The notes below the pieces were generated by a model. That model made no database searches and was not told the DNA's origin. It saw only the letters and a program-made list of their open reading frames with translations. This document shows positions 8,321 through 62,848 of a stretch of 64,000 nt of DNA, one piece after another. Within the stretch, counting starts at the first letter, position 1; each line of letters starts with the position of its first letter. The DNA is taken from NCBI GenBank assembly GCA_038087875.1, contig CM075977.1, forward strand, positions 353,586,001 to 353,650,000, read 5' to 3'. This DNA comes from Malacoraja senta. Taxonomy: Eukaryota. A program made the translations under genes and the position numbers.

Positions 8321-8399
8321 TCATAATGAAATATTCCATGATGAAAAATTAGAAGATTCAATGTGAGGACAAATACTCTATTGAACAGGTGTATGAGAG

Positions 8400-9820
8400 A
8401 GAGCACTGGTTATATAAAGGCCTGGTTTGGTAACAAAAAGGAAAAGGATGACAGAATCTCATAGACACTGCACGGTCCATCATGGGTACTGGCCTTCACA
8501 CCGGGTTCAACCGGGTGGCGCCGCGAGTGGCAGCCTCGCCAGCAGCTCATGTGTTTTTTTGACTTTTTTTGTTATTTTTAGTGTGTCAAAATGTATGTTT
8601 TAATGTTTCTCAGTATGTCTGATGTGGGGGTTGGGGGCGGAATAGGGGGAAACCGTTTTCAATCACTTACCTCGACGGAGATGCGACTATTTTCCGTGAC
8701 GCATCTTTGCCCCCCTTGCAGCCTAACAACTGGTTTGGTGCGGCCTTTCCAGACCAGAGACAGAGCCAGAGCTTCAAGCAGCAGGCGCAGCGCGGACTTA
8801 CCATCGCGGAGTGGGTGATGGCATCCTTTGCCGAGGATCGCCAGTGTTGGAGCTCCGACCTCGGGTGCCTGCTGACTTTATCATCGTGGAGCAGCAGTCT
8901 GCGGAGCTTCTAGCCGCAGGCGCGGTGCGGACTTTAACATCGCGGAGATGTGATCCTTTGCCGAGGATCGCCAGTGTTGGAGTTCTGACCGTGAGGCCTG
9001 TGGACTTTAACATCGTGAAGCCGTAAGAAGCGGCCGATTCGGGTACTCCAAGCAGCGGAGTGTGTTCCGATCCGTCCCGACGTCAGAATTTCGATCATCC
9101 CGACGAGAGGGCCTAACATCTGTAGCGGCGACTGTGGAGGGTTTAAGGCCCCGACCACGGGTGAACAAAGGATGAAGATGGCTGAACTTTATTGCCTTTC
9201 ATCACAGTGAAGAATGTTGATTCCACTGTGGTGGATGTTTATGTTAAATTCTATTGTGTATTGTGTTCTTTTTACTTGTATGGCTGTATGGTAACTCAAG
9301 TATCAGTGTACCTTAATTGGTGCACGTGACAATAAAGTGAACTTGAACTTGAACACCATCAAAGGGATCTTTAGGAGGCGCTGCCACAAAAATGGTGCCA
9401 ATATGATCAAAGACCCACACCACCCAGTCCACACTCTCATTTCGCTTCTGTCATCGGGAAGAAGGTACAGGAGCCTGAAAACCATGACCACCAGGTTCAA
9501 GAATAGTTGCTTCCCAGCAACCATCAAGCTCTTGAACACTACATAACACTAAATTCAGAACTATGAACTTCTATGGACTGTGTCTTTGAATGTATTGCAG
9601 ACCTCAGCATTTTTTTCATAGTTGTTAAGTTATCAAAAAATAATATTTTATTATATTTATCTGTAATAGCCCCGTCCCACGGTACGAGTTCATTCCAAGA
9701 GCTCTCCCGAGTTTGCCCTGATTGCATTTACGGGCCTGTTAAGATGCAGCAAATAAGAATTTCATTGTTCTGTTGTCAGTACATATTACAATTAAACACT
9801 CTTGGCTTTCTTGACTCTTG
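8400..9820 (+). mobile_element. Rex1/Babar LINE 3' fragment, interrupted by the 8503-9352 insertion
   Basis: IKDPHHPVHTLISLLSSGRRYRSLKTMTTRFKNSCFPATIKLLN (ORF 9337-9546) is the typical Rex1 ORF2 C-terminus. Confidence 0.75.
8503..9352 (+). mobile_element. Unclassified CpG-rich non-autonomous retroposon, copy A
   Basis: TSD ACACC (8498-8502 and 9353-9357); GGCGCC..TGGCAGCC head; internal repeats; AATAAA plus (TTGAAC)n tail; related to four other copies in the window. Confidence 0.75.
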
Positions 9821-11464: not shown

Positions 11465-12689
11465 TATCAGGATTAAATTCTATTTGCCATTCCTGGGCCA
11501 GTTTAACCATTGATCATTATCATTCTGTAGCTTAAGGCTGTCGTCCTTGTTACCAGCAACACCATTAGTTAGGGTAAAAAAAAGTCAAGTTCTCTTTCTC
11601 AAATACCCTGAGCATCCCATTCAATACATGGGAAAGGAAAACGAGTTAAAGACATATGCAAAAAGATGAATGTGTGCACAGAGTAAATGCTGACACGGGC
11701 CGATGAGCTTAATGGTCTGATTCCATACTACATGTATTTCCTATGTTTAGTCGAATGCTATGAGACTTAGAGATCAAAATATCAGCAATGTTTCCTGAAT
11801 CCAAAATGTATTTCTGTCATCAGGAAAATAATTGAACTGTCAATCCAATCTTAAGTAAAATAGGAATTGAAATCTAGAAAATGATCACTGGTAATATATA
11901 GAAACAAGGCACTGCAAATGCTGGTTTATATAAGAAGACAGAGTGCTGGAGTAGTTCAGCAGGACAGGTAGCATCTCAGGAGAAGATGAATATCCATGTT
12001 CTCCAGAGACGCTGCCTGATCTGCTGAGTTACTGCAGGACTTTGTGTTATTGTTCTATTTTGTTATTCCTGGCAAAGAGCGCCATCTGCTGACTACACAA
12101 AGTCCCCTAAAAATGTGTGTTTTGAATTGTTATTATTATCGGACTGAAAGACGACAACTTCCATGATCATGGGACAGAATGACTTTAACAGAGGCACAAA
12201 GTGCTGGTGTAACTCTGGGTCATGCAACATCTCTGGAGAACATGGATAGGTGATGTTCCGGGCCGGGACCTTTCTTCAGACATTGCAGAGAGGGAAAAGA
12301 AGCTGGAAGAGTGGAGGGGCAGGACAAAGCTCGGCAGGTAATAGGGTAATACGGTTGAAAACCCCACTTGCCTGTGTTACCTGCCATGCATCCACTTTTC
12401 TTTTCAACATTGGTTCAATGGTAGTTTATTGTCACATGTACCTCGGTACAATGACATTCCTGTTTTGCATAGGAGCAAATGAGAGAGGCACGTATAAGAC
12501 ACAAAATGCTGGAGTAACTCAGCGGGTCAGGCAGGTCAGGCAGTATATCCGGAGAACATGGTTAGGTGATATTTCAGATCGGTACCCTTTGATCCTGCTC
12601 GATCTGCTGGGTATTTCCAGCATTCAATTGGACAGTGTTGAGGAGAATAATCTGCTGGTTCAATATCTGTGGCCAAGTAAGGTTCGAAA

Positions 12690-15589: not shown

Positions 15590-16270
15590 TAGTTTAGTAT
15601 AATTAATTATTGTCATGTACCAATGTGCAGTGAAAAGCTTTTGTTTGCATGTTATCCAGTCAAAGAAGACTATACACGATTACAATCTAACCTTCCATGG
15701 TACACAGATAAAGGATAAAGGGTAGAACATTTAGTATAAGATAAAGTCCGATGAAAGATAGTTCTAAGGTCTCCAATGAGGTAAATGGGAGGTCAGGACT
15801 GCACTCTAGCTGATGAGAGGACCGTTCAGTTGCCTGATAGCAGCTTGAATGCGCTGTCCACGGGCGCCCTGGAGGATTTCCATGACCGTTGGGCACCACG
15901 GGGGGTGGAGTGTATCCTCAATGAGGATGGGGAAATAGTGATTTAATATTCAATATTTAAGAATATTTGCTTTATTTTGTATTATGGTGGCGGGTTTGTT
16001 TATATTTTTGTACTGTACATATCATTTTTGTAAATATTTGATTACAATTATTTTTGTTAAAAAAATAAAAAGAAAAAGATAGCAGCTTGGAAGAAACACT
16101 TCCTGAATCTGAAGGTATGCGTTTTCAAACTTCTGTACCTCTTTATGCTGGGTGAGGGGAGAAGACAGAGATTGGATTGAGACTGGCCCTTGATTGTGTT
16201 GACGGCCTTGCCGAGGCGGCATGAAGTGTAGATGGAGTCAACGGAAGGGAGATTTCTGTCGGCGCACTGT
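15590..16270 (-). mobile_element. Rex1/Babar 3' fragment(s)
   Basis: LPSVDSIYTSCRLGKAVNTIK..KRYRSLKTHTFRFRKCFF on the minus strand. Confidence 0.65.
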
Positions 16271-27500: not shown

Positions 27501-30500
27501 AATGTTCGGACGAATCAATAAAAACAGTAATAATTTCCAATTTTTTAAAAAGTTTAGCACAGTACATCCTGTAGTATCATTTTATTCTGTACTGTTTGGG
27601 CAACAAAAGTAATATCTTGACTATTAATGGCCTTAAATGCAAAAACTCCAAAAACTAACAACCGAATAATAAACTGCTCAAAGTAAACAAGATTTTTTGC
27701 ACTCCTTCGCTCCTCCGGCCACATTTTCTCCTCCCCTCTTCTATCCAGTCCTTACCAAGAATAAAATTATACTGGGCAAGTTGTGCATTTCGGATCTTCT
27801 TGTTCAATGTGCAGCCTTGGTCAAGATCAACGTCACTCATTAATCCAGCTTCATGAAACTGCCGCTGAACCTAGACATTTATAAAAGAATCATTAGGGGA
27901 AAATAATTCTGAAAAAGGACAAAGATCATGACATTGGAAATGCCTCAGCGCAAGCCTCTGGAATTCATAATATATTCATATATTAAATTTCACTGTACCA
28001 ATTGGTGCATGTGACAATAAATGTCTCTTGTCTCTGAAAGGGCAGATCATTGGGGTCATTTAAAAAGTAAGTAAATGTTTCAAAGATCAGGGAATGGAAG
28101 AAATGGCTCAGAAAAGGAAATTAAACATGTGGCAGATCAAAATGATCATATTAAACAGCAGACGGGAATGATGGGCCAAATGGCCTACTACCGCCAATAT
28201 TTCCAATGTTCTTAGAGAAGTGTAGGTCATTGATTTCCACATCATGGAAACCTCAAATTTGTTGCAATCAGTTTTAGTGATCATGGGAAATGCTGATTGA
28301 TTCACAACATAATCTGGGCCAATATCAATACATTCAAGTAGTATAAAAGCAGGATAAGTTATTAGCTATAATACTAGAGTACAAATAGAGAAAGGTAATT
28401 TTGTACATTTTAAGAATTACAGATGTTAAATCTTGTGAGAAAATTCAGAGTGAAAGGATTTATCAAGATTACACCAAGAGTCCCTGTACAATTATGATGG
28501 ACTTCCACACCAACTAATTCATATTGATTTTCACACCTAATCAAAACATAAAGATCCTGCAATCCTGTTAAAAAGTAAAACAGGAATTACAAATGAGAAA
28601 TTGATTCAGAATACTTTTGTTTTATTACCACAAAGGAACGAATCTGCTGCTATACTTTGCTTGAAAATGTAAATTTTGAATTAGATTTAATATAACAAAT
28701 TGAGAATACTTTTCACACATCTACATGGAGAAAAGTAAGATAATAGTTTCCCAATTTCACCTTTTGTGCATATTCCTCAAATGCAGGTCCCACGGGTACA
28801 ACCATAACTTGACGCGGAGATATCCAAAGGGGCCTGTAAGGTAAAAAAATTGCAGCAATGCATGTCATTATTCGAAAGTGAAAACAAATTGATATTGGTT
28901 TATTATTGACATGTGTAACAAGATACAGTGAAAAGCTTTTTTTGCGTGCTATCCAGTCAAATCACATTGTACACACTGTTGGTGATATGTGCGCTTAAGA
29001 ACTTTTAAGAAGCCAGAGATACACGGCTGTGAAGCTCGGCGGACATTTAACATTACCGGTCGGTTATCCTTGGTTCTGAAAACTACTGCTTATGTTTTTT
29101 TCCCCGATGACCCAATGGAATTCACCGGTCAACAACGGCTACAAACTACGAGAACCTTCGACCTCCTGGCGACCCACCTACGGCATGAGAATTCTCGCTA
29201 CTCTCCATGGTGGTTTCATTCTGGTCGTCGCTAATTTTTCAACATGTTTTGCAACCATAATGAGGCCACGACTAGTTCCCAGAATACGGGAACTCCTCAC
29301 GACCATGAAGGTGCCTCCCCGGCAACCACCCGCAAACATGTGGCGACTGCATAGTCTCCTGCAGTCGCCTAAATAGTCGCCTAAGTGGGACAGGCCCATC
29401 AGGAATTCCTAAAGCATGTCATAGCAAGGAGAATACTTCAAAGCATCATTATGCTGGGACTTAGGAAATTCAGCAGCACGTAATGGGAATTTCCTACCTT
29501 ACATTCAGGTAGCAAAAACTCCCACATTTAACATTGTGAAAATGACAGGGTCACCATTTAAGTGAGATGTTAGTCATGGGTAAAATATTGATTAGCCTAC
29601 CAGGAATGTTTTTGTTTTCTTTTTATAAATGTGACATAGGACCTTGTGTCCTTTTGAGGGAGTAGCCAATATTTAATTTGCCTTGTCAACATAGTACCAG
29701 CGATTATGCACTCCTTCAAATCAAGTCTCAATCTGGATTTTGGGGCTCACTCAAAATCCCAGAATTCTAATGCAAAGTCACATCTGCTACACTTATTATT
29801 AGAAGCAATTATGTAACGGATTAGATTTCTGATATTAATAAGTCATTTTGCAATTCCATCTATTTTAAAGCTCCAAACTCCAAATATGTACTTTCTGATT
29901 AAGTTACAACTAATTATTGATCTATTTTCTGTGTAATCACTTTTAAGAATTAGATCAAACCAGTAGCATTGGATCATATCATTTCTTTCATCATGCTCTT
30001 TAAATTGTGTGTGTGCTTTCTCTTAATCTATATTGTTCATTGCAAAGGCATAATAAAGGCAACAAAAGATTCACCGGTTTTGGTTATTTTTTGTTTGCCA
30101 GAAATATCAACATGCTTGCATGTATTATTGCTTGTGACCAATCTGGCCTATTACAGGACAGAGTTGAACAAAAGTACTCAATACCTCTCCTGCTCCCATC
30201 AAGAAAGCAAAGTTGAACAAGTGTTTACCACAGCCAGCTCAAGGACAAGAATACCTGATAAAACTGCCATCTTCCTCAGTGACAGCATAGAAAACCAACA
30301 GACACTCCTTTCTGCAGCACTAGTCTAATATTTCAGTCAAGAACCACAATTCTGAGGAGCATTAATGAATTGTTGAACTGGAAATAAATGAGAGTCGCAG
30401 TGAGCGTATTGTCTCAGAGCTGACTGCATGCCAGATGCCACACAGATTTTTAAATCCCAGTTGCCAGATCAGTTTACAACAACAGGTGGTTCTTCTTAGG

Positions 30501-33500: not shown

Positions 33501-36500
33501 GACAAACCTTCTCAGCAGTGTTCCACAATTCAATATCACCAAGAAATTTCTCTGGACGAGTAGAAAGCTCAAGTTTAAAAGTAAATCCGAAAATTTCATA
33601 GACAGCACGAAGAAAATCCAGGCAACCTTTAATTTCTGACTCAATCTGATAAAACAAAAATATCAAGCATTACATTTGAAATGATAAAATTACCATCAAC
33701 AGGCTGGCACTGAAACTATGAGAAGGACAAATGAGAGAAGCCATTTAATTGCCAGAAATGTGATACAATAAGAGTACTGCTAACATTGGTCTTATTCCCA
33801 TTTCATTTAAAATAGCACATCTGGTCAGGTCAGGGGGGGAGTTCCCCCCGCCACAGGTACCATGTAATCCTGTGCTACCTGCTCCATGGTCGGATAGTCG
33901 GCGACTAAACCGTCTCCCCCACCTGGTTGGCCAGGTGAGGAGGGGGCTGTGGACCCCAGCAGGACCAAAATCAAGACATGTCAAAGGGAGGATGAGCTCC
34001 TCGCGAGCCAATGGCCATCCACACCAGTAGAAGTTGCGATCACTGTCGTACAGAGCATTGTAAGGCACCGTGCCCGTTGATGTTTTCAACGATGATGACA
34101 TCCGCAAAAATGCAGTACACTTTCACAGAAAAACTTAACAATTCCAAAATATTGAAGCAGGGACAACTTCTGACAGAAAAAATACTTGCTCTTCTACGAT
34201 TAGAACCAGCACATCAAGAATATTTTTGCAACAAGCAGAACACTACATGATAGAAAATTACATGATAGAAAGCCTCACATCTATGTATGTTTATCTTTTC
34301 CAGTTCCGAGTTTACTTTCCAATTAAGAGATTCCCTTGAATTTTGACTGGACTGAAGTGATACTAAAACGAGTTTGGCATTCAGTAACTAAACCATTCCC
34401 CTGTCAATACTGTTTTCCTCATCAAAGTACTACATTTTCTTTGCAATTGTAAACTGAAAAGTATCAATTTACAGTTCTCTGAATTTCACAATTGAGCAAA
34501 CATTCATTGCACAACCATGCCCTTGATTAAAAATGAATTGTTCATTAGTTCTACTACTCTAATCTACCTACGCAAGTCATTCCTTCCTCTCTCCTAGAAC
34601 TTAAATGGTCCTTAAAATCCAAGCTTGCTGTCACAAAACCAGTTACTTTCAGTTGATTCCATCTTGGCTGCTGTAACCATATTATATACCTGTTCCATGG
34701 TGCAGAAAATGTGGGCATCATCCTGCTGAAACCTGCGCACCCGAGTCAAACCAGTCAACGCTCCTGACAGCTCATTACGGTGAAGTACACCAAAGTCCGC
34801 ATACCTCATTGGTAGCTCCCTCCAGGACCGAGGGCGATTGTCAAACATGAGGCTGAAACATGAACAATCAAATAAATGCCTTGCAAATTGAAAAAAAGTA
34901 TTACGTTCAACAAAAACTTCCGAAGCAGTAAATAAAGAAACATTCAAAGAACAGATAAGGAATACACACTTGAAGTTTTGTTTAGCAAAACAGTGCGGAT
35001 ACAGGCCCTTTGGCCCACTGAGTCCACGTCGACCATCAATACCTGCACACTAATCCCTGCTGACTTTAACATCGCAGTGCGGGGCGATTCCTTGCCGAGG
35101 ATCGCCAGTGTTCGAGCTCCATACAGCGGAGCCTGTGGTCGGAAGCCACGGTCTCTGGTAAGAAGCGGCCTATTCGGAAATTCCAAGCCGCAGAGTGTGT
35201 TCCGATCCGTTCTGACGCCGGAGTTTCGATCATCAAGGCGAGAGGGCCTGTACATTGGGCCGTCTGTAGCGGCGACTGAGGAGGGTTCAAAGGCCCCAAC
35301 CACAGATGAACAAAGAGGAAGATGACTATTGCCTTCCATCAGTGAGAAATGTTGATTCCACTGTGGTGGATGTTCATGTTAAATTCTATTGTGTATTGTG
35401 TTACTTTTATTTGTATGGCTGTATGGTAACTCACGTTTCACTGTACAAATTGGTGCATGTGACAATAAATGTGAACTTGAATTTGAACTATCCTACACCC
35501 ACCAGGGAAAATTTACAATGTTACCAAGCTAATTAGCCTACAAGCCTGTACATCTTTGGAATGTGGAAGGAAACCAGAGATTCCAGAGAAAATGAGGAGA
35601 ACGTACAAACTACGTACAGACAGCATCCATAATCAGGATCGAACCCAGGTCTTTGGTGCTGTAAGACAGCAACTCTACCACTGCGCCACCATGCTGCCCA
35701 GTCCTTATGCTAGAGTCAAATATTTAGCATAAGAAAATAGGAAGGGACTAATTGGCACTCGCACAACAGGCCTGATGTTTGTCGTAAGGGACTTGATAAA
35801 CTGAGGTTTGGGTAAATCACACAAGGCAATTTCAAGAGATTTGGTGACAAATTTGAGATTGAGGAAAGGGAAGGAGTAGGGAACAAGGTGGAGAATACCA
35901 GATAACACTCCATACAAAAAAAACAATGAACCCCATGTGACTGAATATTGGGAGAGGATCATTCAATAATATCTTTATTAGTAATCTTGTACAAATGTAT
36001 TCTGATGTTTTCTGGTGCAGTTTACCTTGACTATTTTGAATGAGACTGTTGTAAACACAATCAATTTGTATTAAAGATCAGTGAACTTTTGTTAGCAGTC
36101 CTTAATCCATAACTGCATTAGCCCAACAACATTCAATGTAATTGTGTTTAATTATCTATGTAGTGCCTTACCTAGGTATTCTGAAGGTTTAAATAACACC
36201 ACATCTTCAGGTTCTCCTTATCTAATCTGCCATTTACAACAAAAACTACTATTTTCCCATCTTGATTTTGGGTGCGTGCGCGTGTGCAGATATTAAATTT
36301 GATTGATCCCACTATTGTTTTTCAAGTGACCTTGTCATAGGCAAAGAATATCAAGACAGCTTTAGCCGCAATCGATGGCATCCACCTCCGTTCCCATCAA
36401 CTGTCCCCTAATTGTACGACTCACCTACACAATAGAAACGATTTACAGTCCCCAATTAACCTATCAATCCACACATCTGTGACATGCAGATTACTCGAGT

Positions 36501-39500
36501 ACACTGAGGAAACCCTCATGGTCACAGGCAGAATGTGCAATCTCTACACAGCACCCGAGGTCAGGATTGAAACTGGAATTGTTGGACGTGCAATAATACT
36601 GGAATGTATTCTTTAAAGAAATATTATTTAAAGATGGTGCAGTGACATAACCAGTTTTACTGGCTGTGTCATTGCACCATCTATAAATAATATATTTAAA
36701 TAATACATTCCAGCAATTTCCCCATCACTGATGTACTAGTGGCCAGAGGACCTAGGGTGATGGAGGAACTGAAGGAAATTCACATTAGGCAGGAAATGGT
36801 GTTGCGTAGACTGATGGGACTGAAGGCTGATAAATCCCCAAGGCCTGATGGTCTGCATCCCAGGGTACTTAAGGAAGTGGCTCTAGAAATCGTGGATGCA
36901 TTGGTGATCATTTTCCAATGTTCTATAGATTCAGGATCAGTTCCTGTGGATTGAAGGGTAGCTAATGTTATCCCACTTTTTAAGAAAGGCAGGAGAGAAA
37001 ACAGGAATTATAAGCCAGTTAGCCTGACATCAGTGGTGGGGAAGATGCTGGAGTCAATTATAAAAGATGAAATAGTGGCACATTTGGATAGCAGTAACAG
37101 GATCGGTCTGAGTCAACATGGATTTACGAAGGGTAAATCAAGCTTGAGTAATCTTCTGGAATTTTTTGAGGATGTAACTAGGAAAATGGACAAGGGAGAG
37201 CCAGTGGATGTAGTGTACCTGGACTTTCAGAAAGCATTTGATAAGGTCGCACTTTGGAGATTAGTGGGCAAAATTAAAGCACATGGTATTGGGGGTAGAG
37301 TGCTGACATGGATAGAAAATTGGTTGGCAGACATGAAACAAAGAGTAGGGATCAAATCCTTTTTCAGAATGGCAGGTAGTGACTAGTGGGGTAGCGCAAG
37401 GCTTGGTGCTGGGACCACAGCTATTTACAATATACATTAATGATTTAGATGACGGGATTAAAATTAACATTCGCAAATTTGCAGATGACACAAAGCTGGG
37501 TGGCAGTGTGAACTATGAAGAGGATGCAATGAGGATGCAGGATGACTTGGACAGGTTGGGTGAGTGGGCAGATGCATGGCCGATGTAGTTTAATGTTGGA
37601 TAAATGTGAGGTTATCCACTTTGGTGGCAAATACAGGAAGGCAGATTATTATCTGAATGGTGTCAAGATAGGATAAGGGGAAGTACAACGAGATCTGGGG
37701 GTCCTTGTTCATCAGTCGCTGAAAGTAAGCATGCAGGTACAGCAGGCAGTGAAGAAAGCGAATGGCATGTTGGCCTTCATAACAAGAGGAGTTGAGTATA
37801 GGAGCAAAGGGCTCCTTCTGCAGTTGTACAGGGCCCTAGTGAGACCACACCTGGAGTATTGTGCGCAGTTTTGGTCTCCAAATTTGAGGAAGGACATTCT
37901 TGCTATTGAGGGAGTTCAGTATAGGTTCACGAGGTTAATTCCAGGGATGGCGGGACTGTCATATGTTGATAGAATGGAGCAGATGGGCTTGTATACTCTG
38001 GAATTTAGAAGGATGAGAGGGAATCTTATTGAAACATAAGATTATTAATGGTTTGGACACGCTAGAAGCTGGAAACATGTTCCCGATGTTGGGGGAGTCG
38101 AGAACCAGGGGCCACAGTTTAAGAATAAGGGGTAAGCCATTTGGAACGGAGACGAGGAAAAACTTTTGCACACAGAGGGTTATAAATCTGTGGAATTCTC
38201 TGCCTCAGAAGGCAGTGGATGCCAATTCTCTGGATGCTTTCAAGAGAGAGTTAGATAGAGCTCTTAAAGACAGCCGAGTCAGAGGATATGGGGAGAAGGC
38301 AGGAACTGGGTGCTGATTGTGGATGATCAGTCATGATCACATTGAATGGTGTTGCTGGCTCGAAGGGCCGAATGGCCTACTCGTGCACCTATTGTCTATT
38401 ACTCCGCTTTCCTCCCACACTCCAAAGATGTACAGGTTTGTAGGTTAATTGGCTTGGTATAATTGTAATTTGTCACTAGTGAGTGTAGGATAGTGTTAGT
38501 GCTGGCTCGAGAGGCCGAATGGCCTACTCCTGTCTATTGATATCAGGATAAGTAGCTTACAACTTTGTTTTTTAAGTAATGACAATTTTTAATACACTTA
38601 AATATACTTTACCCTCTGTCTGCCAGAGTCTTGTGTCAAGTTTAGTTGATCTTTATTCATAAAATCTGTAGAATGCCTTTCCACCCCACTTTAGTTTCTC
38701 ATTTGCAGACACTTATATTTTACTTTCACTTTAGTATCACGTGTGCCAAGGTACAGTGAAAATATTTTGTTGCATGCTATCCAGTCAGCAGAAAGACAAT
38801 ACATGATTACAATCAAGCCGCTTACAATGAATAGATACACGTTAAGGGAATAACATTTAGTGCAAGGTAAAGCCAGCAAAGTCCGATCAAGGATTAGTCC
38901 GAGGGTAACCAACGATGTAGATAGCAGTTCAGCACTGCTCTCTGGTTGTGGTAGGATGATTCAGGTGCCTGATAACAGCTGGGGAAAAAATATCCCTGAA
39001 TCTGGAGGTATGCATTTTCACACTTCTATACCCGTTGCCTGATGGGAGTGTGGAGAAGAGGGAGTGGGCAGGGTGCGTCTCGTCCTTGATTATGCTTTTG
39101 GCCTTGCCAAGGCAGCACAAGGTATAAAGAGTCAACTTTCCTCTTCATTGCTTAGGTTTAGGTTTATTATTGTCACTTGTACCGAGGTACAGTGAAAAAC
39201 TGTTTTGCATGCTGCCCAATTAATTTAGAGAATACATGTACGAATACAATCAGGTCAAACTCAAGTACAATAGATGGTACGAAATGAAAGATAGTATATG
39301 CAGAATATAGTACTCAGAATCGTAGAGTAACAGTTCCAGAAAAAATGTCTAATGTCTGCAATGAGGTAAGTCGGAGATTTGGGACTGTATAACATATGGA
39401 AGGACTGTTCAGAAGCGTGATAATAGATGGGAGGAATCTGTCCCCCAGTCTGATGGTGCGCGCTTTCAAGATTTGGTATCTCCCGCCTAATGGGAGAACG

Positions 39501-42500
39501 GAGAATGAATGAGTGGGGTAGGAGACAAAAATACTGGAGAAACCCAGCAGGTGAGGCAAAATCTATGGAGCGAAGGAATAGGTGACGTTTCGGGTCGAGA
39601 CACTTCTTCAGACTGATGTAGGGGTGGGAGGGGCAGGAAACAGAATGGAAGAGGTGGAGACAGTACGCTGTGGGAGAGCTGGGAAGGAGGAGGGAGAAAG
39701 CAGGGACTACCTGAAATTAGAGAGGTCAATGTTCATGCCGCTGGGGTGTAAACTGCCCAAGCGAAATATGAGGTGCGGCTCCTCCAATTTGCGGTGCAAC
39801 TCACTCTGGAAGAGGCCCTGGACAGAAAGGTCGGATTCGGAATGGGATGGGGAGTTGGTGCTGAGCCACCGGGAGATCAGGTTGGTTAATGCAAACCGAG
39901 CGGAGGTGTTGGGCGAAGCGATCGCCAAGCCTGCGCTTGGTCTCACCGATGTAGAGCAGTTGACACCTAGAGCAGCGGATGCAATAGGTGAGATTGGAGG
40001 AGGTGCAGGTGAACATCTGCCGCACCTGGAAAGACTGCTTGGGTCCTTGGATGGAGTAAAGGGGGGGAGGTAAAGCGACAAGTGTAGCATTTCCTGCGGC
40101 TACAAGGGAAAGTACCGTGGGAGGGGGTGGTTTGGGTGGGAAGGGACAAATTGACCAGGGAGTTACGGAGGGAGCGGTCTCTGCGTAAAACCGAAAGGGG
40201 AGGAGATGGGAAGATGTGGCCAGTGGTGGGATCCCGTTGGAGGTGGCGAAAATGTCAGAGGATTATCTGTTGTATGTGACGTCTGGTGGGGTGGAAGGTG
40301 AGGACAAAGGGGGACCCTGTCCTTGTTACGAGTGTGGGGGGGGGGGGGGGGAGATGGGGAGTGAGAGCGGACCTACGGGATATAGAGGAGACCCTGGTGA
40401 GAGCCTCGTCTATAGTCGAAGAAGGGAACCCCCGTTCCCTAAAGAATGAGGACATCTCCGATGCCCTGGTACTCTAGTGCTCACATAATCACACATCTTA
40501 AACATTCCAGCTTTAGAAATGCATGTTAAAATAGAGGTAGGTTGAAAGTTTTGATATTTAAGAAATTCAATCACATACCAATGACCTGGACAATTCATAG
40601 GTTTTAAGGCAAAGATCTCCTTTTCCACTTCAAAGCAGAACATATTCTCACTGTAGTGCTGCCAGTGTCCCGAGGTTTGCCACAGCTTACTATTATAAAT
40701 GTTGGGAGACACTACTTCTGAAAAGCCCCTTTTCCTGTATTCACTCTAAGGACAAAACAGAGAAATGAATAAAGAACCATTGGATTTAAATTTACTAGAT
40801 TTAAAAACATGCATTTGTACCTAACCTCTAAATGCCTCCACATATCGTGCAAAAGGCCTACAGCAGTGAAAATAATACATTTATTCGACTTAAGAGGATG
40901 ATATCATCCGTCGCATTCTACTTCAAAGCTGAATACCAACAGTACCAAGAGTAAAATGGCACAGAACTAAAATAGCAAAGCTCAGTATGGGAATGGGAAG
41001 AGGAGTTAAAGTGTTTGGTAACTGGGAGATCACGTAGGCCCAGGCAGACTGAGCGAAGGCATTCAGCAAAATGTTCGCCCAGTCTACTTGGTTTTGCCAA
41101 TGTATAAGAAACCACACCTGGAACAGATACAGTAGATGAGGTTGGAGGAGGTGCAAGTGAACCTCTGCCTAACCTGAAAGGACTGTTGGGGTCCCTGGAC
41201 AGAGTCGAGGGAGGAGGTATAAGGACAGTAGCATCTCCTGCGGTTGCAGGGGAAGGTACCTGTGGAATGGGTAGTTTGGGTGAGAAGGGACAAGTTAACC
41301 AGGGAGTTGTAGAACGAACGGTCTCTGCGGAAGGCGAAAAGGGGTGTAGATGGGAAGAAGTGACCAGTGGTGGGAGAAAATGTTGGGGGATTATGTGTTT
41401 TATGAGCTGGCCGATGGGGTGAAAGGCAAGGACTAGGGGGATTCTGTACCTGTTGCATCTGGGGGAGGGGGAGCAAGAGCGGAGCACCTAGGAGACAAGT
41501 GTGAGGGCCTCATCTATGATTGAAGAAGGGAAGTATGACATCTCGGATGTCCTGGTATGGAACAGCTCATCTTGGGCGCAGATGCGGCATAGACGGAGAA
41601 ATTGAGTAGGGGATTGTCTTTGTAGGAGGCATTGTGGGACGAGGTGTAGTCTATATAGTTGTGGGAGTCAAAGAAACAATCACAATTATGGAAAATAATA
41701 TAGGTTTATCAAATAATCTAGCTAAATAAAATAGAGTGACAATAACACTGTTGGTGGTGTATTATAAATCTCATTACAATCAGAGACAGCTGGATGAGGA
41801 AATCTGTAGGGAAAATTCTGACGAGTGTCAAAGTAAGAGTAGCTAATTTAAATTGCCACTATATTAAGTCGAATACAATCAGAATATCTGGTAGGGAGGG
41901 CAGGGAATTCCGTTCACTATGTGGCACAACCGGAGGGATTGAAATTCTGGATATTTAAAGAATGAAATTGGCCAAGTGGTAAGTTTCAGTGGGAGAGTAT
42001 TAAAAATATTGAAACATAGAAAATAGATGCAGGAGCAGGCCATTCCTGCTTTTTTCCCCATATCCCTTGATTCCTTTAGCCCTAAGAGCTAAATTGGATT
42101 CACAACTCTCTGGGTGAAAAACTTTTTCCTCATATTTTTGTGCAAGTGATCATAACTAAATGATATTTAGCACAAGTATAGAAAAAGGGCATTTGATAAG
42201 ATCTATGTGTATTTAAAAGGCTTTTGACAAGGTCATACATGGCAAATGTGTCAGAAAGGTAGTCCATCAGAAGCAGGGGAGACAGACAAATCTATCTATC
42301 TATACTATTACTAAAACTCTCATCTTGACCATTTCCGGTCTGCGTTGAATTTAAATTTACGCAAAAACGACCCCCCCCCCCCAGCGCCACGAGCAGAGTG
42401 CAAGCTGCGTCTGCTGCGACCACCCTCTCTCCCCATCCCCCGTCCCCCACAGCCCCCCTTCCCCCTCCCCCACACCCTCTCCTCTGAGTGGTGGAATATT

Positions 42501-45500: not shown

Positions 45501-48500
45501 GGACCGGCCCCGCGCGGCCACACGATGACCGTGCGCCTCAACGCGACCTCGAGGTCACGTAATTTGCGTGCCAAGGACACGTAAGTGGGACAGGCCCTTT
45601 AGTCATCAGGTATATGCAAAACTAATCAGTAGTTGTTTGGGGAAATCAGGGAATGTGGGATTAGAGTAGGAAACTGTTACTAAGGTAAAAGCTAAGCTAC
45701 GATTTAGAGACCACACATGGGGTCTAATAACTTCCTGTTTCTATGTTCCACTTAATACCAGTGCTTAATCCTTCATTGTATAACTTTTACTAAAAAAATG
45801 TGCATTCCTCATATCATAGATTAAAGACGCAAGGAACACTTCATAGTTCTCAAAGGAAACTTCAAAATCACAGCTCCTCACCTGTACACTGTTGTGGTTG
45901 GTGTATTCACCTTCTCATTCAGAATCCTGCACTTGAATTTGTTATACTAAAGAGAAAAGAAAATAGCGTTTGAGAACAATTACATAGAAGCATGACACTC
46001 TCAAAATTGTTAAAAATAAAAAGCAAGATCAGTTACACAATGTCAAAGATCAGTACATCTCTATTAAGTTCATTTTTTCTTAATAATGGTGAACAATCTA
46101 TGAAATTGAATTTCTATATCAAATCATTTTTGCAAGACTAACACCAATTCACCTAGAAAAATAAGTGAAAGTATCAGAATTCAGGATCTTTTAATATTTC
46201 CCCACAAGGCAGGTAACAATTAAAAAGCCAGGTAACAAATTCAAAAGTACAACACCATTTTAGGTTACATGTTATGTCAAGAAAATGGCACCTTATGCTT
46301 AGTAACGGAATTTTCCCAAACGTAAATTTTTTTTTGTCAACTATTGTCCCCGCAACTCACACTATCCAGGACAACTAGTGTTGTAAAATGCAGATCGTTT
46401 AGCATCAAGCACATTGTGCTACACTCGAATTTGTACTATTATAAATGGATGAATGTTCTTTTTGACTATTATAAATGGATGAATGTACTATTATTAATGG
46501 ATGAATGTACATTTAGATTAATCTATATAGAATTAAAAAAGTATACCAGACAGATATGATTAAATTACATATTATACAAACTCCGTATTAAATGTCTTAT
46601 ATTTTGCCTTAGTGACACTAAAAGCTTTATTTTTATTAATTAAACAAATATGTAAAATCTTTCTTATTATGGCAGACTATAAGTATCCAAATTTTATTAA
46701 CTGTTGTGGGATAAAATAAATTAAGAAATTTGTTAGATCCTTTGGATTCATCTGCAGGATGAAATAGACAATAGACAATAGATGCAGAAACAGGCCATTT
46801 GGCCCTTCGAGCCAGCACCGCCATTCAATGTGATCATGGCTGATCATCCCCAATCAGTATCCCGTTCCTGCCTTCTCCCCATATCCCCTGACTCCGCTAT
46901 TTTTAAGAACCCTATCTAGCTCTCTCTTGAAAGCATTCAGAGAACCTGCCTCCACCGCCCTCTGAGGCAGAGAATTCCACAGACTCACCACTCTCTGTGA
47001 GAAAAAGTGTTTCCTTGTCTCCGTTCCAAATGGCTTACTCCTTATTCTTAAACTGTGGCCCCTGATTCTGGACTCCCCCAACATCGGGAACATGTTTCCT
47101 GCCTCTAGCGTGTCCAAACCCTTAACAATCTTATATGTTTCAATAAGATCTCCTCTCATCCTTCTAAACTCCAGAGTGTACAAGCCCAGCTGCTCCATTC
47201 TCTCAGCATATGACAGTCCCGCCATCCAGGGAATTAACCTTGTAAACCTACGCTGCACTCCCTCAATAGCAAGAATGTCCTTTCTCAAATTAGGGGACAA
47301 AAACTGCACACACTACTCCAGGTGTGATCTCACTAGGGCTCTGTACAACTGCAGAAGGACCTCTTTGCTCCTATATTCGATTCCTCTTGCTATAAAGGCC
47401 AACATGCCATTCGCTTTCTTCACTGCCTGCTGTACCTGCATGCTTACTTTCATAGACTGATGAACAAGGACCCCCAGATCCCGTTATACCTCCCTTTTTC
47501 CCAACTTGACGCCATATAGATAGCTTGACTGCCTTCCTGTTTTTTATACCAAAGTGGATAACCTCACATTTATCCACATTAAACTTCATCTGCCATGCAT
47601 CTGCCCACTCCCCCAACCTGTCCAAGTCACTCTGCATTATCATAGCATCCTCCTCACAGTTCACACTGCCACCCAGCTTTGTGTCATCTGCAAATGTGCT
47701 AATGTTACTTTGAATCCCTTCATCCAAATCATTGATGTATATTGTAAATATCTACGGTCCCAGCACCGAGCCTTGCGGTACCCCACTAGTCACTGCCTGC
47801 CATTCTGAAAGGGACCCGTTAATCCCTACTCTTTGTTTCCTGTCTGCCAACCAATTTTCTATCCATGTCAGCACTCTACCCCCAATACCATGTGCCCTAA
47901 TTTTGCCCACTAATCTCCTATGTGGGACCTTATCAAATGCTTTCTGAAAGTCCAGGTACACTACATCCACTGGCTCTCCCTTGTCCATTTTCCGAGTTAC
48001 ATCTTCAAAAAATTCCAGAAGATTAGTCAAGCATGATTTCCCCTTTGTAAATCCATGCTGACTCGGACCAATCCTGTTACTGCTATCCAAATGTGCGGTT
48101 ATCTCATCTTTTATAATTGACTCCAGCATCTTCCCCACCACTGATGTCAGGCTAACTGGTCTATAATTCCCCGTTTTCTCTCCCGCCTTTCTTAAAAAGT
48201 GGGATAACATTAGCTACCCTCCAATCCACAGGAACTAATCCTGAGTCTATAGAACATTGGAAAATTATCACCAATGCATCCACGAATTCTAGAGCCACTT
48301 CCTTAAGTACCCTGGGATGCAGACCATCAGGGCCTGGGGATTTATCAGCCTTCAGTCCCATCAGACTTAGACTTAGACTTAGATTCCTTTATTGTCATTC
48401 AGACCTTTCGGTCTGAACGAAATTTCGTTGCCTGCAGTCATACATATAATAAATAACAAAACACACAATAAACACAAATTAACATCCACCACAGTGAGTT

Positions 48501-51500
48501 CACCAGGCACTGTGATGGAGGCAAAAGTCTTAAAGTCTCTGTCTCTTCCCTCTTTGTTCTCCCTCTGCGCTGAGGCGATCCAGGCTTCTGATGTTGTGAC
48601 CCCGCCGGGGGGATGGTAAGTCAGTCCCGCGGCTGAATCCGTGCTCCGTCCGCGACGGGCCGGTTCAAACTCCGCGGCCCAGTGTGGCCGAAGCTGCCGC
48701 CCTCCAGTCCAGCGGACGCAGCTGTAGTTGCTGGAGCCCCAGAAAAACAGGTCACCCACCTGTGACCTGCGAGCTCCCGACGATGTCGTCCACCGGGCCC
48801 GCGGCCGAGCCTCCGGAATCAGGTCGCCACCAGCGTCCTCGGTCGCCACCGCCGGAACGCCACCGCAGCCCTGAAGCCGGCCAGCCCCGCGCTGGTAAGT
48901 CCTGGCTCTGCCTCCGGAGCCACGAGGTCGGTCCGCCATTTTGGCCTCAGCGCAGACGGAGGCAGAGAAGGGGGATACGACAAGAAAAAGTCGCATTCCC
49001 CCGAAGGAAGAGACAACCATCAGTCTATCCAACACCATTTCCTGCCTAATTTCTTTCAATGAAACCGAAGTCCCACCTGCTGCTTCAATGTAATCATTAA
49101 TCTCCAATGGCCTATTGGCAAACTAGACCATACATTTTTTTAAATGCCACTATTTACATTGATGGTCTTCTGCGAAGATAATGTTCACAGTGTTGAGGTC
49201 AAAGCGAAGAAAATATTTTCAAAGAAAATGTTGCTAGTTGTTCAGAATACCTTTATTTCATGCAGGAAGATTTAGAGGCTGGAATAATAATAGAACACTT
49301 TTGTACCTACTTAGAAGCAACATGAAGACATTGTTTACTCTGATCGGTTCAGGCCTGTGACACTCCTTTATTAAATAAAAACTTTAAAAATATATTTTAC
49401 AGGAAAGGGGAGATCCTAAAAGTATTCTTAAAGGTTTGCCTGATCTGAATCTTCTGTTTCAACCACATGTACAAATATAACAGGCTGTTCAAAGCAATGA
49501 GCATGTGCCTAGAAACAAACTGCTCGTCTAATCTCCAGCATGATACAAAAAAAATCAGGATGCATACCTTGAACATCTCAAGAAGAGTCTCTTTCTTCAC
49601 TTCAAGTCTCTCAAATGGCTGTTTGTCCTTCATTATACGTTTACATAGGCTTTCCAACGCTGGGAAATCATTGCTGGAAACACCCCTGTTGTAACAGAAG
49701 GTTTGTATTAAAATATACAAAAAGTAATTTACCAATATATAGATCATTGGAACTAACAAAAAACATAATTAACAGAACCATACCCTTCTTCCAAGAACAT
49801 GTCATAATAAAATCCATTTTCAATGGGTGGTCCATAGCAGAGACATCCTCCAAAGATTCGTTCCATGGCCTCGCCCAATATATGAGCACTGGAATGCCAA
49901 TATACCTGGTACAGAAAACAAAGTTGTTGATATATGCAAAAATAATATGATGATACAAATACTTATTTACTGACAATTCTTGAATTAGTATCTGCATTGC
50001 ACATTACGCTCTTAAATTTGACTAGAACCTTACTCAGTGCTGCCTGGGTATTCCTGATCCCTCATTCAGAACAGCTTTGTACCTGCCTACACTATTGAAG
50101 AGATAACCAACTGCTCATGCTGTGAGATATTCCACCCTTCCCAATGCTGCACACTGCTGTGCTAGGTAACTGGCATGAATCTCACATGCGATGACTCACC
50201 CTGCAGATGGGTGTGGAGAAGCTGCCTGCAAGAACTGGTGCTGGGCAGACTTGACTGCTGAACTCTGAAATGTGGGACTCGGGTATGTGAACTGGCTTGC
50301 ATGGTGAGAGCAGGCCATTGCTGTGGGCTGGCAGCACCTCCTCCATGTATCAACAGACCAGCAGGATTTCATGGTGTCTCATTATCTCCTGTCTGCAGAT
50401 TTCTGTTTGGCAACTTGTTCAATGATGGACTCAGGCCTTTGGTCCTGCTATCATATCCTTATATCATATCATATCCCTGGTCTGGGGAGAGCTGCGCAGC
50501 CAAACAAAGAGAAGGGAGATGTCAGCTTCCATCATATTCAACAGAAGACCATTTGAGATACCCAAGGACATGGGCAGTCCACTAATGCATGGAGCAGATG
50601 CTGCAATAATCCAAATTTACAATGCCAGCAGAAGTGCAAACTCAGGCCCCAAACGTCAGTGCAAGCAGACTGACCATTCACTTGCCAGACTGAGCTGTTT
50701 GTGTCTGGCATCTGGCCCAGCAATATGGTCAGCAAGATACATCACAACACAATTTAACACTAACTCCACTTCCAATCTTGTTTGAAGAACAAGAAAGCAT
50801 CCTCAGCACTAATCACTTGTCCTGCTAATAGGCTTCTGATCTGCTGTAGAGGCCATCTTATTATTTCTCTAATTTAGAGCAAGTACTTGTGTAAAAATCC
50901 CACAGAGAACGGTGTCAAAGCAGAAATGCAACAAATAGTAAACATTAAAGGACACAAAGTGCTGCAGTAACTCAGCGGGTCAGGCAGTATCTCTGGAGAA
51001 CAGAGATAGGTGATGGTTTGGGTCAGGACCTTCTTCAGCTTGTTTGTTCACTGATGACTGCCAAATTTAGGCCTGTTATTTGTTGAATTGCAACAAAAGG
51101 CAAGATTTTATGGACACTTCAAGGGCCAACTCAGATGATTTGAAATAATAGTTTCCAAAGGACAAAGGACATTTATTTGTCACGTACACCAATTGGTGTA
51201 GTGAAATTTGTCTTGCCATGCAGCACACAGATAAAGATAAGACACAACATTAAAGAATTTAACAATAAACATAAAAAAACATCCCCCCACAATGGTTCCC
51301 ACTGTGAGGGAAGGCACAAAGTCTAGTCCCCATCCCCTTGTCCACCCATAATCGGGCCTATTGAGGCCTCCGCAGTCGCCGCCACGGGGCCCGATGTTTC
51401 AGGCCCTTCTTCGCCGGGTGATGGTGCTCCGGCGTCGGGAGAATCCTCTCAGCGGCTTGGGACACCTGGAGCAGCCGCTTCCTAACTGGAGACCGCGGCT

Positions 51501-61824: not shown

Positions 61825-62848
61825 TAATAGTTTCGAAAATCAGCGTGGGACAGGCCCTTCGGCCCACCAAGTCCGTACCGTCCCCGCACATTAACACTAT
61901 CCTACACACACTAGGGACAATTTATATTTATAGACCACCAGGGGCGCCGGGGAGATGGCTGCCCTACCATCTGTTAGTTTTTTCATTATTTTTGTTATTT
62001 TTTAGTTTGTTAAAAGTTTTTTGTTTTAATGTTCTTCGGTTTGTTTTATGTGGGGGGGAGGGGGAGGGGATCGGGGGAAACTTTTTTTCAAGTTCTTACC
62101 TTCCCAGAGATGTGATCAATTTTCAGATCACATTCTCCGGGCTCTGCTGCCTTTCATTGATGGAGCTGGAAGCCTCCTCGGACTGTCGTGAGCCCCACAG
62201 TGGGGCGCGGACTTAACATCGGAGCGGATCCCTTGCCCGGGATCGTTCCCACTGCAACACCAAGGGCTCGCAGTCTCGGGTGAGGACGAGTCGGGAGCTC
62301 CAACGTCGTGGAAGGTTCACCAGCCCCGACGCGAGGTTCGATCGCCCGGCGCGGGGAAGTTGACATCCCCCGGATGCGGGAGCGGATCGCCTTGACGCGG
62401 AGGGCGATCGAAGATCATCCCGTCAACGGGGGCTCGAGGCCCACAACCGAGGAAGGACTAAAGGAAGAGACCTGAACTTTATTTCACCTTCCATCACAGT
62501 GAGGAATGTGTGGGAGTCACTGTGGTGGACGTTCATGTTAAAATGTGTTTTTGAGTGATCTGTTACTTTTAATTGTATGACTGACCTGGCCAATGAAATT
62601 CCTCGTATGTTGCAAAACATACTTGGTGAATAAAGTGTGATTCTGATTCTGATATTTATGCCAAGTCAATTAACCTACAAACCCACACGTCTTTGGCGTG
62701 TGGGAGGAAACCGGGGCACCCGGAGAAAACCCACACGGTCATGGGGAGAACGCGCAAACTCCGTACAGACAGCACCCGTAGCCAGGATCGAACCCAGGTC
62801 TTTGGTGCTGTAAGGCAGTAACTCTACCGCAGCGCCACCGTGCCGCCC
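61825..62848 (-). mobile_element. V-SINE (HE1-like) interrupted by retroposon copy C
   Basis: Head GGGCGGCACGGTGGCGCTGCGG at 62848, B-box GGTTCGATCC, V-domain; tail at 61825-61931. Confidence 0.85.
61932..62651 (+). mobile_element. Unclassified non-autonomous retroposon, copy C
   Basis: TSD ATATTTAT (61924-61931 and 62652-62659); GGCGCC..ATGGCTGCC head; AATAAA plus (TTCTGA)n tail. Confidence 0.78.

What the first reader, a model, noticed from the sequence alone, without database searches (positions are those of the whole stretch)
8503..9352. Five-copy non-coding retroposon family with a covarying 3' stem-loop
Seen: copies at 8503-9352(+), 35059-35488(+), 48365-49016(-), 51158-52002(-) and 61932-62651(+). 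Bodies are CpG-rich and, apart from A and B, strongly diverged; three have clear TSDs (ACACC, CCATCAG, ATATTTAT); there is no tRNA A/B box or ORF. Tails differ: TTGAAC, CTAAGT, GTCCTTT and TTCTGA repeats after AATAAA. All keep a hairpin ~120 nt before the tail, UCCAUCACAGUG..CACUGUGGUGGA (9198-9235, 48485-48519, 62490-62529), with loops of 3-14 nt; copy B has a 2-nt deletion in the 5' arm. Copy E reads UUCCCUCACAGUGG-gaa-CCAUUGUGGGGGGA (51282-51312), an A-U to C-G compensatory change. Inference: a structured-RNA, SINE-like superfamily mobilised by a Rex1/Babar-type RT, since the tails resemble the Rex1 tails in this window. I do not recognise it as a described family.
Basis: partly seen in the sequence, partly recalled or inferred. 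Interest (0 to 1): 0.75.

Follow-up and report, generated by a model that had tools for sequence, protein, structure and literature searches.

The report
Rex1-dependent non-coding skate retroposon family

Summary
Five related non-coding repeats lie at the stated coordinates, and I found a sixth 51-nt stump at 27986-28036. Four have clean 5-8 bp target-site duplications. Three are cut short at the 5' end.

All share a ~225-nt head, a ~180-nt 3' domain, AATAAA and a 6-7-nt repeat tail. The CpG-rich bodies (CpG o/e about 1) are largely unalignable.

The last ~35-55 nt match the 3' ends of six LINE fragments in the window. These are a terminal hairpin (H3), AATAAA and the tail. H3 covaries strongly: 8 of 10 pairs change on both sides, and 0 of 500 shuffles reach that.

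Relatives of that LINE's C-terminal peptide carry the Rex1 primer motif FSSAFNT, so the Rex1 reading is supported.

It shows only one compensatory pair, which 106 of 500 shuffles reach, so covariation is unproven here. H2 is absent from the LINE 3' UTRs in the window.

There is no tRNA, 5S, 7SL or snRNA head. T7 runs near the 5' end argue against Pol III.

Contigs of two organisms hold more than 20,000 matching pieces each. The scan has noted this family before on other DNA of this genome. Dfam and Repbase could not be searched.

The parts
8503..9352 (+). Copy A, full length (850 nt). It is inserted in the C-terminal coding part of a Rex1-like LINE fragment; TSD ACACC.
   Evidence: empty-site joint 8495->9356 in contigs of two organisms
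8503..8727 (+). Head of A. It holds GGCGCC..GTGGCAGCC, T-rich runs (T7 at +52 and +62), G-runs, CTTACCT and hairpin H1.
   Evidence: head HMM hits only A, D and E
8676..8709 (+). H1 of A (5' hairpin, AGAUGCG/CGCAUCU). The family majority has T at 8699, which completes a 9-bp stem.
   Evidence: (z -2.9)
8769..9021 (+). CpG-rich body of A: two ~130-135-nt tandem monomers carrying GGACTTWACATCGCGGAG motifs.
   Evidence: GC 0.59, CpG o/e 1.01
9198..9235 (+). The private C>T at 9199 gives a G-U pair.
   Evidence: (z -3.6)
9303..9329 (+). H3 of A, the terminal hairpin shared with LINE tails.
9331..9352 (+). AATAAA, then G(TGAACT)2.8 tail of A.
35059..35488 (+). Copy B, 5'-truncated inside the body and 80% identical to A. 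H2 at 35336-35366 has a 2-nt deletion; H3 at 35438-35462; tail (TGAACT)-like. It is nested in a SINE-like repeat.
48365..49016 (-). Copy C, 5'-truncated just upstream of H1 and inserted in the RT region of a CR1-like LINE; TSD CTGATGG. H1 48970-49002, H2 48485-48519, H3 48395-48420 (UUCAGACC/GGUCUGAA), tail (CTAAGT)3.5.
51158..52002 (-). Copy E, full length; TSD TGGAA. H1 core 51804-51823, H2 51282-51312 (carries the one compensatory pair), H3 51180-51204, tail (TGTCCTT)2.
61932..62651 (+). Copy D, full length; TSD ATATTTAT; nested in a SINE-like repeat. H1 62107-62137, H2 62490-62529, H3 core 62605-62622 (GUAUGUU/AACAUAC), tail (TGATTC)2.7.
27986..28036 (+). Copy F, a stump holding only H3 (27990-28014), AATAAA and a (TGTCTCT)2 tail.
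39162..39517 (-). Rex1-like LINE fragment a: ORF C-terminus (..[20 protein letters not shown]), 3' UTR, H3-type hairpin, AATAATAAA and (CCTAAA)2 tail.
38727..39114 (-). Rex1-like LINE fragment b: C-terminal ORF, 3' UTR, H3-type hairpin and tail.
9353..9810 (+). Rex1-like LINE fragment c, the host of copy A (its upstream part ends at 8502). ORF end ..LLSSGRRYRSLKTMTTRFKNSCFPATIKLLNTT*, then 3' UTR and a decayed H3.
12421..12500 (-). Rex1-like LINE tail d (H3 UCAUUGUACC/GGUACAUGUGA, then AATAAA).
28899..28960 (-). Rex1-like LINE tail e (decayed).
15606..15662 (-). Rex1-like LINE tail f (decayed).

Best explanation
This is a superfamily of 0.7-0.85 kb non-coding, non-autonomous non-LTR retroposons in a skate genome.

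Each element has four parts:
- a conserved ~225-nt head (GGCGCC..ATGGCTGCC box, T-rich runs, G-runs, CTTACCT, hairpin H1);
- a fast-changing, CpG-island-like body, partly built of tandem monomers;
- a conserved ~180-nt AT-rich 3' domain with hairpins H0, H2 and H3;
- AATAAA followed by 2-3.5 copies of a lineage-specific 6-7-nt unit.

The last ~35-55 nt (H3, AAUAAA and the tail) copy the 3' end of a Rex1-type LINE.

Most likely mechanism:
1. The element is transcribed from its own 5' region, probably by RNA polymerase II (inferred).
2. Its RNA 3' end presents the stem-loop and repeat tail that the Rex1 reverse transcriptase recognises on its own RNA (inferred, from the known stringent-type SINE/LINE pairs).
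3. The LINE endonuclease and RT then copy the element into a nicked target by target-primed reverse transcription. This leaves 5-8 bp duplications and frequent 5' truncation (both shown).

H1 and H2 are family-specific modules that do not come from the LINE. They probably act as RNA hairpins, in RNA stability, particle formation or the promoter region. Their role is unknown, and for H2 the RNA-structure reading is plausible but not proven.
For: - Repeat family and domain pattern.
- TSDs and 5' truncation.
- Empty-site joint 8495->9356 in contigs of two organisms.
- No ORF in common, and the ORF of copy C has no relatives.
- No tRNA or Rfam head.
- Seven to ten T>=4 runs on the sense strand of each full-length copy, including T7 at +48 to +62. 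By established knowledge these would stop Pol III.
- AATAAA lies before the tail in all six copies.
- An HMM built from four LINE tails alone retrieves family tails F, B and A (E 6.6e-6 to 3.8e-4).
- H3 on 6 copies plus 4 LINE tails: 91% of cells paired against 79.5% in shuffles, 8 of 10 pairs changed on both sides, 0 of 500 shuffles as high, slid controls 18-50%.
- H0, H2 and H3 are predicted without guidance by RNAalifold.
- Single-sequence folds give z-scores of -1.3 to -7.2.
- H1 inner stem reads GCGAC/GUCGC (A, C), GUGAUC/GAUCAC (D) and GCAGC/GCUGC (E).
- Rex1 assignment. The LINE C-terminal peptide has 1200 relatives. Every one of the best 150 that retains an RT domain-3 motif reads DFSSAFNT (4) or DFNSAFNT (1). 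FSSAFNT is the translation of the Rex1-specific primer RTX1-F1 (PMC4635592). The closest named relative is from Leucoraja erinacea.
- Abundance. 23,216 contigs were laid in organism A and 20,730 in organism B. Summed depth of the 3' domain is about 8e5 against about 1e2 in the neighbouring unique bins. Eight organisms hold 18-23% of the words.
Against: - No full-length Rex1 lies in the window, so the RT and the tail are linked only through the C-terminal peptide and a primer-derived motif.
- Copies C and D have H3 stems with no matching LINE tail in the window.
- Transcription, its polymerase and its start site are not shown. The runs laid were contigs, and those guessed as RNA may be DNA.
- H2 covariation is not significant with five copies.
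- A LINE lineage that carries the whole head or 3' domain may exist elsewhere in the genome.
Confidence: 0.7

Rival explanations
1. ORF-less deletion derivatives of a Rex1 LINE. The head would be the LINE's 5' UTR with its promoter monomers, and the 3' domain would be its 3' UTR, joined after loss of the coding region.
For: CpG-rich tandem monomers in the body recall LINE 5' UTR promoters. The terminal module is LINE-like. No full-length Rex1 is in the window to compare heads.
Against: Upstream of the last ~50 nt, the 3' domain shows no significant similarity to any of four LINE 3' UTRs in the window. The head HMM hits only A, D and E. Bodies differ completely between lineages while head and 3' domain are kept.
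Confidence: 0.15
2. A true Pol III SINE with an unrecognised head, derived from a small RNA that is not in Rfam.
For: SINE/LINE tail sharing is the classic SINE pattern (PMC3747384). The 5' 45 nt are conserved.
Against: There is no tRNA and no Rfam match. T7 and T6 runs at +47 to +62 and up to ten T>=4 runs lie on the sense strand. Length is 720-850 nt. An AATAAA is conserved.
Confidence: 0.05
3. Retrocopies of a host long non-coding RNA or mRNA gene family that happens to end in a Rex1-like tail. These would be processed pseudogenes, not a self-propagating family.
For: AATAAA, a CpG-island-like body and no ORF.
Against: Tens of thousands of matching contigs occur in two organisms. Several deeply diverged lineages each have young, CpG-intact copies and their own tail unit. 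The conserved head, which is retroposed with the element, points to an internal promoter.
Confidence: 0.05
4. H2 is conserved as a DNA- or protein-binding palindrome (CCATCACAGTG..CACTGTGGTGG), not as an RNA helix.
For: Nine of 12 pairs never vary and only one changes on both sides, so sequence conservation alone could explain the data.
Against: The spacer between the arms varies from 3 to 16 nt and is 39% variable, against 5% in the arms. All three substitutions in the arms keep pairing: two G-U pairs and one compensatory pair. The family majority at 9199, and a variant consensus in another organism, turn wobble pairs into Watson-Crick pairs.
Confidence: 0.3

Closest known systems
Stringent-type SINE/LINE pairs, e.g. 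eel UnaSINE1/UnaL2 (PMC1636434, PMC3747384)
   Same: The non-autonomous element shares the LINE's 3' terminal stem-loop and short repeat tail. The stem is kept by compensatory changes. There are TSDs and 5' truncation.
   Different: There is no tRNA-derived Pol III head. The element is three to five times longer, has a CpG-island-like variable body, and carries extra family-specific hairpins (H1, H2). The partner is Rex1-type, not L2. The tail unit differs between lineages.
Rex1/Babar LINEs (PMC6274825, PMC13343379, PMC4635592)
   Same: A conserved 3' end is followed by an oligonucleotide tail of variable sequence and length. Rex1 is abundant in rays and skates. LINE fragments with this tail in the window belong to a family whose relatives carry the Rex1 RT motif FSSAFNT.
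   Different: The element encodes nothing. Only the last ~35-55 nt resemble the LINE.
Hominid SVA elements (own knowledge)
   Same: A LINE-dependent, non-coding, presumably Pol II-transcribed retroposon with simple-sequence 5' region, a GC-rich variable and tandem-repeat centre, a conserved 3' part and AATAAA. Size is 0.7-1 kb or more.
   Different: SVA is a mosaic of known repeats, ends in poly(A) and uses L1's relaxed recognition. Here the pieces have no known source, and the tail is a hairpin plus microsatellite of the stringent type. This is an analogy only, with no homology.
HE1 SINE / HER1 LINE of elasmobranchs (Ogiwara et al. 1999, cited in PMC3747384; own knowledge)
   Same: A SINE-on-LINE parasitism already documented in sharks and skates.
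   Different: HE1 is a tRNA-derived V-SINE.

Membership tests
SINE in the strict sense (SINEBase definition, PMC3531059) | Head derived from tRNA, 5S, 7SL or another Pol III-transcribed RNA with an internal promoter | tested here: not met
   ARAGORN finds 0 genes. Rfam has no hit at gathering score, and only one chance lncRNA hit at E<=5.
SINE in the strict sense (SINEBase definition, PMC3531059) | Transcribable by Pol III over its whole length (no internal T-run terminators); short (about 80-600 nt) | tested here: not met
   There are 7-10 runs of T>=4 on the sense strand, with T7 at +48 to +62. Full-length copies are 720-850 nt.
SINE in the strict sense (SINEBase definition, PMC3531059) | Non-coding, dispersed, with TSDs and a LINE-type or simple-repeat tail | tested here: met
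Non-autonomous partner of a stringent-type LINE | 3' terminal sequence shared with an autonomous LINE of the same genome | tested here: met
   An HMM from LINE tails alone retrieves F, B and A, and alignment A2 agrees. E is visibly the same type. C and D have the same architecture but different stems, and no matching LINE lies in the window.
Non-autonomous partner of a stringent-type LINE | Terminal stem-loop maintained by compensatory changes | tested here: met
   8 of 10 pairs changed on both sides, 91% paired, 0 of 500 shuffles as high, slid controls 18-50%.
Non-autonomous partner of a stringent-type LINE | Mobilised in trans by the LINE's proteins | not testable with these tools
   Needs a retrotransposition assay.
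Rex1/Babar as the partner LINE | RT of the Rex1 lineage | tested here: inconclusive
   No partner RT lies in the window; only CR1-type [11 protein letters not shown] occurs. Relatives of the LINE's C-terminal peptide that keep an RT carry DFSSAFNT, the RTX1-F1 primer motif. No phylogeny with named references was possible.
Rex1/Babar as the partner LINE | Conserved 3' UTR end followed by an oligonucleotide tail of variable unit | tested here: met
   LINE tails: (CCTAAA)n, GTGAAA/GTAAAA, ACTCTTG-like. Element tails: TGAACT, CTAAGT, TGTCCTT, TGATTC, TGTCTCT. Description in PMC6274825.
ORF-less LINE deletion derivative | Head and whole 3' domain identical to the LINE's UTRs | tested here: inconclusive
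   For the 3' domain this is not met against four LINE 3' UTRs in the window. The head cannot be tested because no full-length LINE is present.
SVA-like composite retroposon | Mosaic of identifiable older repeats, with a poly(A) tail | tested here: not met
   No part matches another repeat of the window apart from the LINE tail. The tail is a microsatellite, not poly(A).

The most novel reading that the evidence does not exclude
A batoid-wide superfamily of Pol II-transcribed structured-RNA retroposons. The elements keep their own functional RNA modules (H1, H0, H2) under selection. They replace the CpG-island body at will and swap the terminal hairpin and tail to follow different Rex1 lineages. 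This would be a modular, partner-switching parasite of LINEs that fits neither SINE nor SVA.
Probability: 0.3. Interest if true: 0.6.

Novelty: new variant of a known kind. Interest (0 to 1): 0.4.

Why it matters
If the reading holds, skates carry tens of thousands of copies of a LINE-dependent element with three notable properties. It has no Pol III head. It keeps CpG-island-like sequence in a methylating vertebrate genome. It shows cleanly which part of a Rex1 RNA the enzyme needs: a ~35-nt hairpin, AAUAAA and a repeat tail.

That gives a natural data set for the little-studied template recognition of Rex1, the CR1-group lineage most prone to horizontal transfer (PMC13343379). It also offers a marker system for batoid phylogeny. 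For genome annotation it explains many CpG-rich 'unknown' repeats in skate introns. It is not a new class of element.

Tried and rejected
1. Getting more copies for a covariance test.
- Exact-pattern scans of genome contigs (twice), metagenome contigs (twice) and viral contigs found nothing.
- A protein search with the open frame of copy C found nothing.
- So no covariance model on a large sample and no R-scape-like test could be made. I did not build a model from five sequences.

2. A coding reading. A 242-aa frame in C and a 175-aa frame in E are not shared between copies and have no Pfam domain or relatives. Rejected.

3. A small-RNA head. Rfam and ARAGORN were negative. A faint likeness of CTTACCT to the U1 5' end, and of the body to 7SK, was not borne out by Rfam.

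4. Whole-3'-UTR homology with the LINE. My by-eye alignment was not significant. Rejected.

5. CR1 as the partner. The CR1-like LINEs of the window end in GGCC..GGCC plus (TATTGTC)n, unrelated to the family's end.

6. Expression. All runs were contigs, and those marked 'RNA?' may be DNA. No statement on expression can be made.

7. ESM Atlas and Pfam on the LINE C-terminal peptide were uninformative.

8. Dfam and Repbase were not available. Paper searches, including searches for the motifs themselves, found no description.

The depth ratios are summed contig depths, so they give an order of magnitude only, not a copy number.

Full report
**What is there.** A blastn self-search of the window with the five stated intervals recovers each of them. 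It shows that A and B are 80% identical over B's whole length. The other pairs match at 65-78%, and only in two regions, the first ~200 nt and the last ~130-190 nt. The search also finds a sixth, 51-nt copy at 27986-28036, which holds only the terminal hairpin, AATAAA and a (TGTCTCT)2 tail. Profile HMMs of the head and of the 3' domain find no further copies in the 64 kb. The only N run is at 16557-16714, away from all copies, and I left it alone.

**Anatomy.** The alignment and domain-wise comparison give a four-part plan.
- The head, about 225 nt, is present in A, D and E. It has 68-73% matches against 56-58% for shuffles.
- The body is 230-430 nt, with GC 0.58-0.69 and CpG o/e 0.93-1.09. 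Only A-E and A-B are alignable. The bodies of C and D are at shuffle level against the rest.
- The 3' domain is about 180 nt, with GC about 0.39. All pairs give 65-85% matches against about 58% for shuffles.
- The element ends in AATAAA and, 0-5 nt later, 2-3.5 copies of a 6-7-nt unit that differs between lineages.

In A the body consists of two ~130-135-nt tandem monomers, and the H1 motif recurs in them.

**Evidence for retroposition.** Clean target-site duplications flank A (ACACC), C (CTGATGG), E (TGGAA) and D (ATATTTAT). B's duplication is imperfect. B, C and F are truncated at the 5' end at different points.

C interrupts the open frame of a CR1-like LINE precisely. A interrupts the C-terminal frame of another LINE. 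B and D sit in copies of a SINE-like repeat.

Contigs of public runs from two organisms contain the joined form 8495->9356, which is that LINE without the insert.

**Not coding, and not a Pol III SINE.** No frame is open in all copies. The 242-aa frame through C starts in the host LINE, has no Pfam domain and no relative among 5.8 billion proteins.

ARAGORN finds no tRNA-like sequence in the window. Rfam finds nothing at gathering score, and only one chance hit at E<=5 in copy A.

Each full-length copy has 7-10 runs of four or more T on the sense strand, including T7 or T6 runs 47-62 nt from the 5' end. By established knowledge of Pol III termination, these would end a Pol III transcript long before the tail.

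With the CpG-island-like body and the invariant AATAAA, Pol II transcription is the likelier source. This is an inference. No usable RNA data were obtained, because the runs were contigs and those guessed as RNA may be DNA. An ATGGC box 20-35 nt from the 5' end resembles, from my memory, the YY1 box of the L1 promoter. That was not tested.

**The LINE-like end.** Six LINE fragments in the window end in the same module as the family. They are at 39162-39517(-), 38727-39114(-), 9353-9810(+), 12421-12500(-), 28899-28960(-) and 15606-15662(-). The shared module reads ..GCATGCAA..TTTCACTGTACC-loop-GGTACAnGTGACAATAAA, followed by a short repeat.

An HMM built only from four LINE tails retrieves the family tails F, B and A over the last ~33 nt, with E from 6.6e-6 to 3.8e-4.

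Upstream of the last ~50 nt, the family's 3' domain has no significant similarity to the LINE 3' UTRs. So the element is not simply a LINE with the middle deleted, at least not of these LINEs.

The CR1-like LINEs of the window have a different end, (TATTGTC)n.

**Which LINE.** The fragments retain only an ORF end of the form ..LLPSGRRYRSLKT.TTRFKNS.FP..I.LLN. Pfam does not recognise it.

A full HMMER search with the 63-aa peptide found 1200 relatives. Among the best 150, every protein that still has an RT domain-3 motif reads DFSSAFNT (four proteins) or DFNSAFNT (one). FSSAFNT is the exact translation of RTX1-F1, the primer described as specific for the Rex1 RT (PMC4635592). The second Rex1 primer translates to SRLFLLR, close to the RL(F/Y)FLR motif found in 25 of the 150.

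The window's own RT fragments are all CR1-type, [11 protein letters not shown]. The closest named relative of the peptide is a Leucoraja erinacea protein.

[quoted passage not shown] It is said to lack ORF1 and to reach its highest genome coverage in rays (PMC13343379).

It is not supported by a phylogeny.

**Hairpins.** Four helices are predicted.

*H3* is the terminal helix before AATAAA. On six copies plus four LINE tails, 91% of cells pair against 79.5% in shuffles. Eight of ten pairs change on both sides, no shuffle of 500 reaches any of four measures, and slid controls give 18-50%. C (UUCAGACC/GGUCUGAA) and D (GUAUGUU/AACAUAC) replace the whole stem. No LINE with these variants is in the window.

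*H1* is in the head. Its inner stem is GCGAC/GUCGC in A and C, GUGAUC/GAUCAC in D and GCAGC/GCUGC in E. That amounts to three compensatory pairs and one inserted pair among four copies, counted by hand, with z-scores of -1.3 to -6.8.

*H0* is a 4-bp helix about 50 nt upstream of H2. RNAalifold predicts it together with H2 and H3.

- All cells pair, but nine of twelve pairs never vary.
- Two pairs vary on one side to G-U, and one pair, in E, changes on both sides.
- 106 of 500 shuffles do as well.
- In its favour, the arms vary 5% and the loop 39%, with loop lengths of 3-16 nt.
- The family majority has C at 9199, restoring a C-G pair that copy A lost.
- A variant consensus in another organism reads CCACCACAGUG, turning the U-G pair into C-G.

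I rate H2 as probably an RNA hairpin (about 0.6), with covariation unproven.

**Abundance and range.** Laid at 80% likeness, contigs of the best run of organism A gave 23,216 pieces, and those of organism B gave 20,730. Summed depth was about 8e5 over 9183-9329, 1e4-1e5 over the body, and about 1e2 in the adjoining unique bins 8350-8447. This is not a copy number, but it indicates thousands to tens of thousands of copies. The 3' bias is what 5' truncation and body turnover would produce. Runs of eight organisms hold 18-23% of the words of copy A.

**Limits.**
- Scans of the three DNA collections found no copy.
- The structural statistics therefore rest on the window alone.
- Dfam and Repbase were not available, and the paper library holds no description and none of the motifs.
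- Earlier notes of this scan describe the same family elsewhere in this genome. I treated them as leads only.

**Verdict.** This is a real, abundant, Rex1-dependent non-coding retroposon family with an unusual non-SINE build. It is a new variant of a known kind, of moderate interest. The headline claim of a covarying H2 is not established. The covariation is in H3 and H1.

Noticed in passing
9203-9209 and 9224-9230 (also in copies C, D, E): The H2 arms contain CACAGTG and CACTGTG. From memory these are the consensus V(D)J recombination-signal heptamer and its complement. There is no nonamer or 12/23 spacer nearby, so this is probably coincidence.
   Followed up: no
39560-40110 (-): Fragment of a Penelope-like element lying directly upstream of a Rex1-like LINE tail. 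It has a GIY-YIG-type frame (..[19 protein letters not shown]..) followed by a minimal hammerhead-like motif (CTGAAGA..GAAAC) at about 39582-39625.
   Followed up: no
46765-48364 (-) and 55800-57570 (+): Two copies of a CR1-like LINE (RT motif [11 protein letters not shown]) in inverted orientation, both ending in GGCC..GGCC plus (TATTGTC)n. Copy C is inserted in the first. Further CR1-type RT pieces lie at about 17080, 27350 and 37230.
   Followed up: partly
34960-35058 + 35489-35650; 61850-61931 + 62652-62850; 13250-13400: A SINE-like repeat (..GGCCCTTCGGCCCAC.. / ..GATCGAACCCAGGTCTCTGGCGCTG..) occurs at least three times. Copies B and D are each nested in one. ARAGORN does not call a tRNA in it.
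   Followed up: no
21-1424 (+): Ty3/gypsy-type RT and RNase H frames (Pfam RVT_1 2e-27, RT_RNaseH_2 4e-12). The best named relative is from the ray Mobula hypostoma (55%).
   Followed up: partly
10626-11031: A 46-nt tandem repeat, 8.8 copies, 87% matches.
   Followed up: no
63308-63691: A long imperfect (CAG/CAC)n array, open in several frames. It may be a low-complexity coding exon or a simple repeat.
   Followed up: no
proteins P0034 and P0085: Short contigs filed under the bacterium Aeromonas cavernicola encode a CR1-type RT up to 74% identical to the window's LINE. This is probably vertebrate DNA contaminating that assembly.
   Followed up: no
62052-62077 (D) and 51857-51886 (E): G-quadruplex-type runs (four or more G3+ tracts) lie about 120 nt from the 5' end of D and E. 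A has three G5 tracts at the same place.
   Followed up: partly
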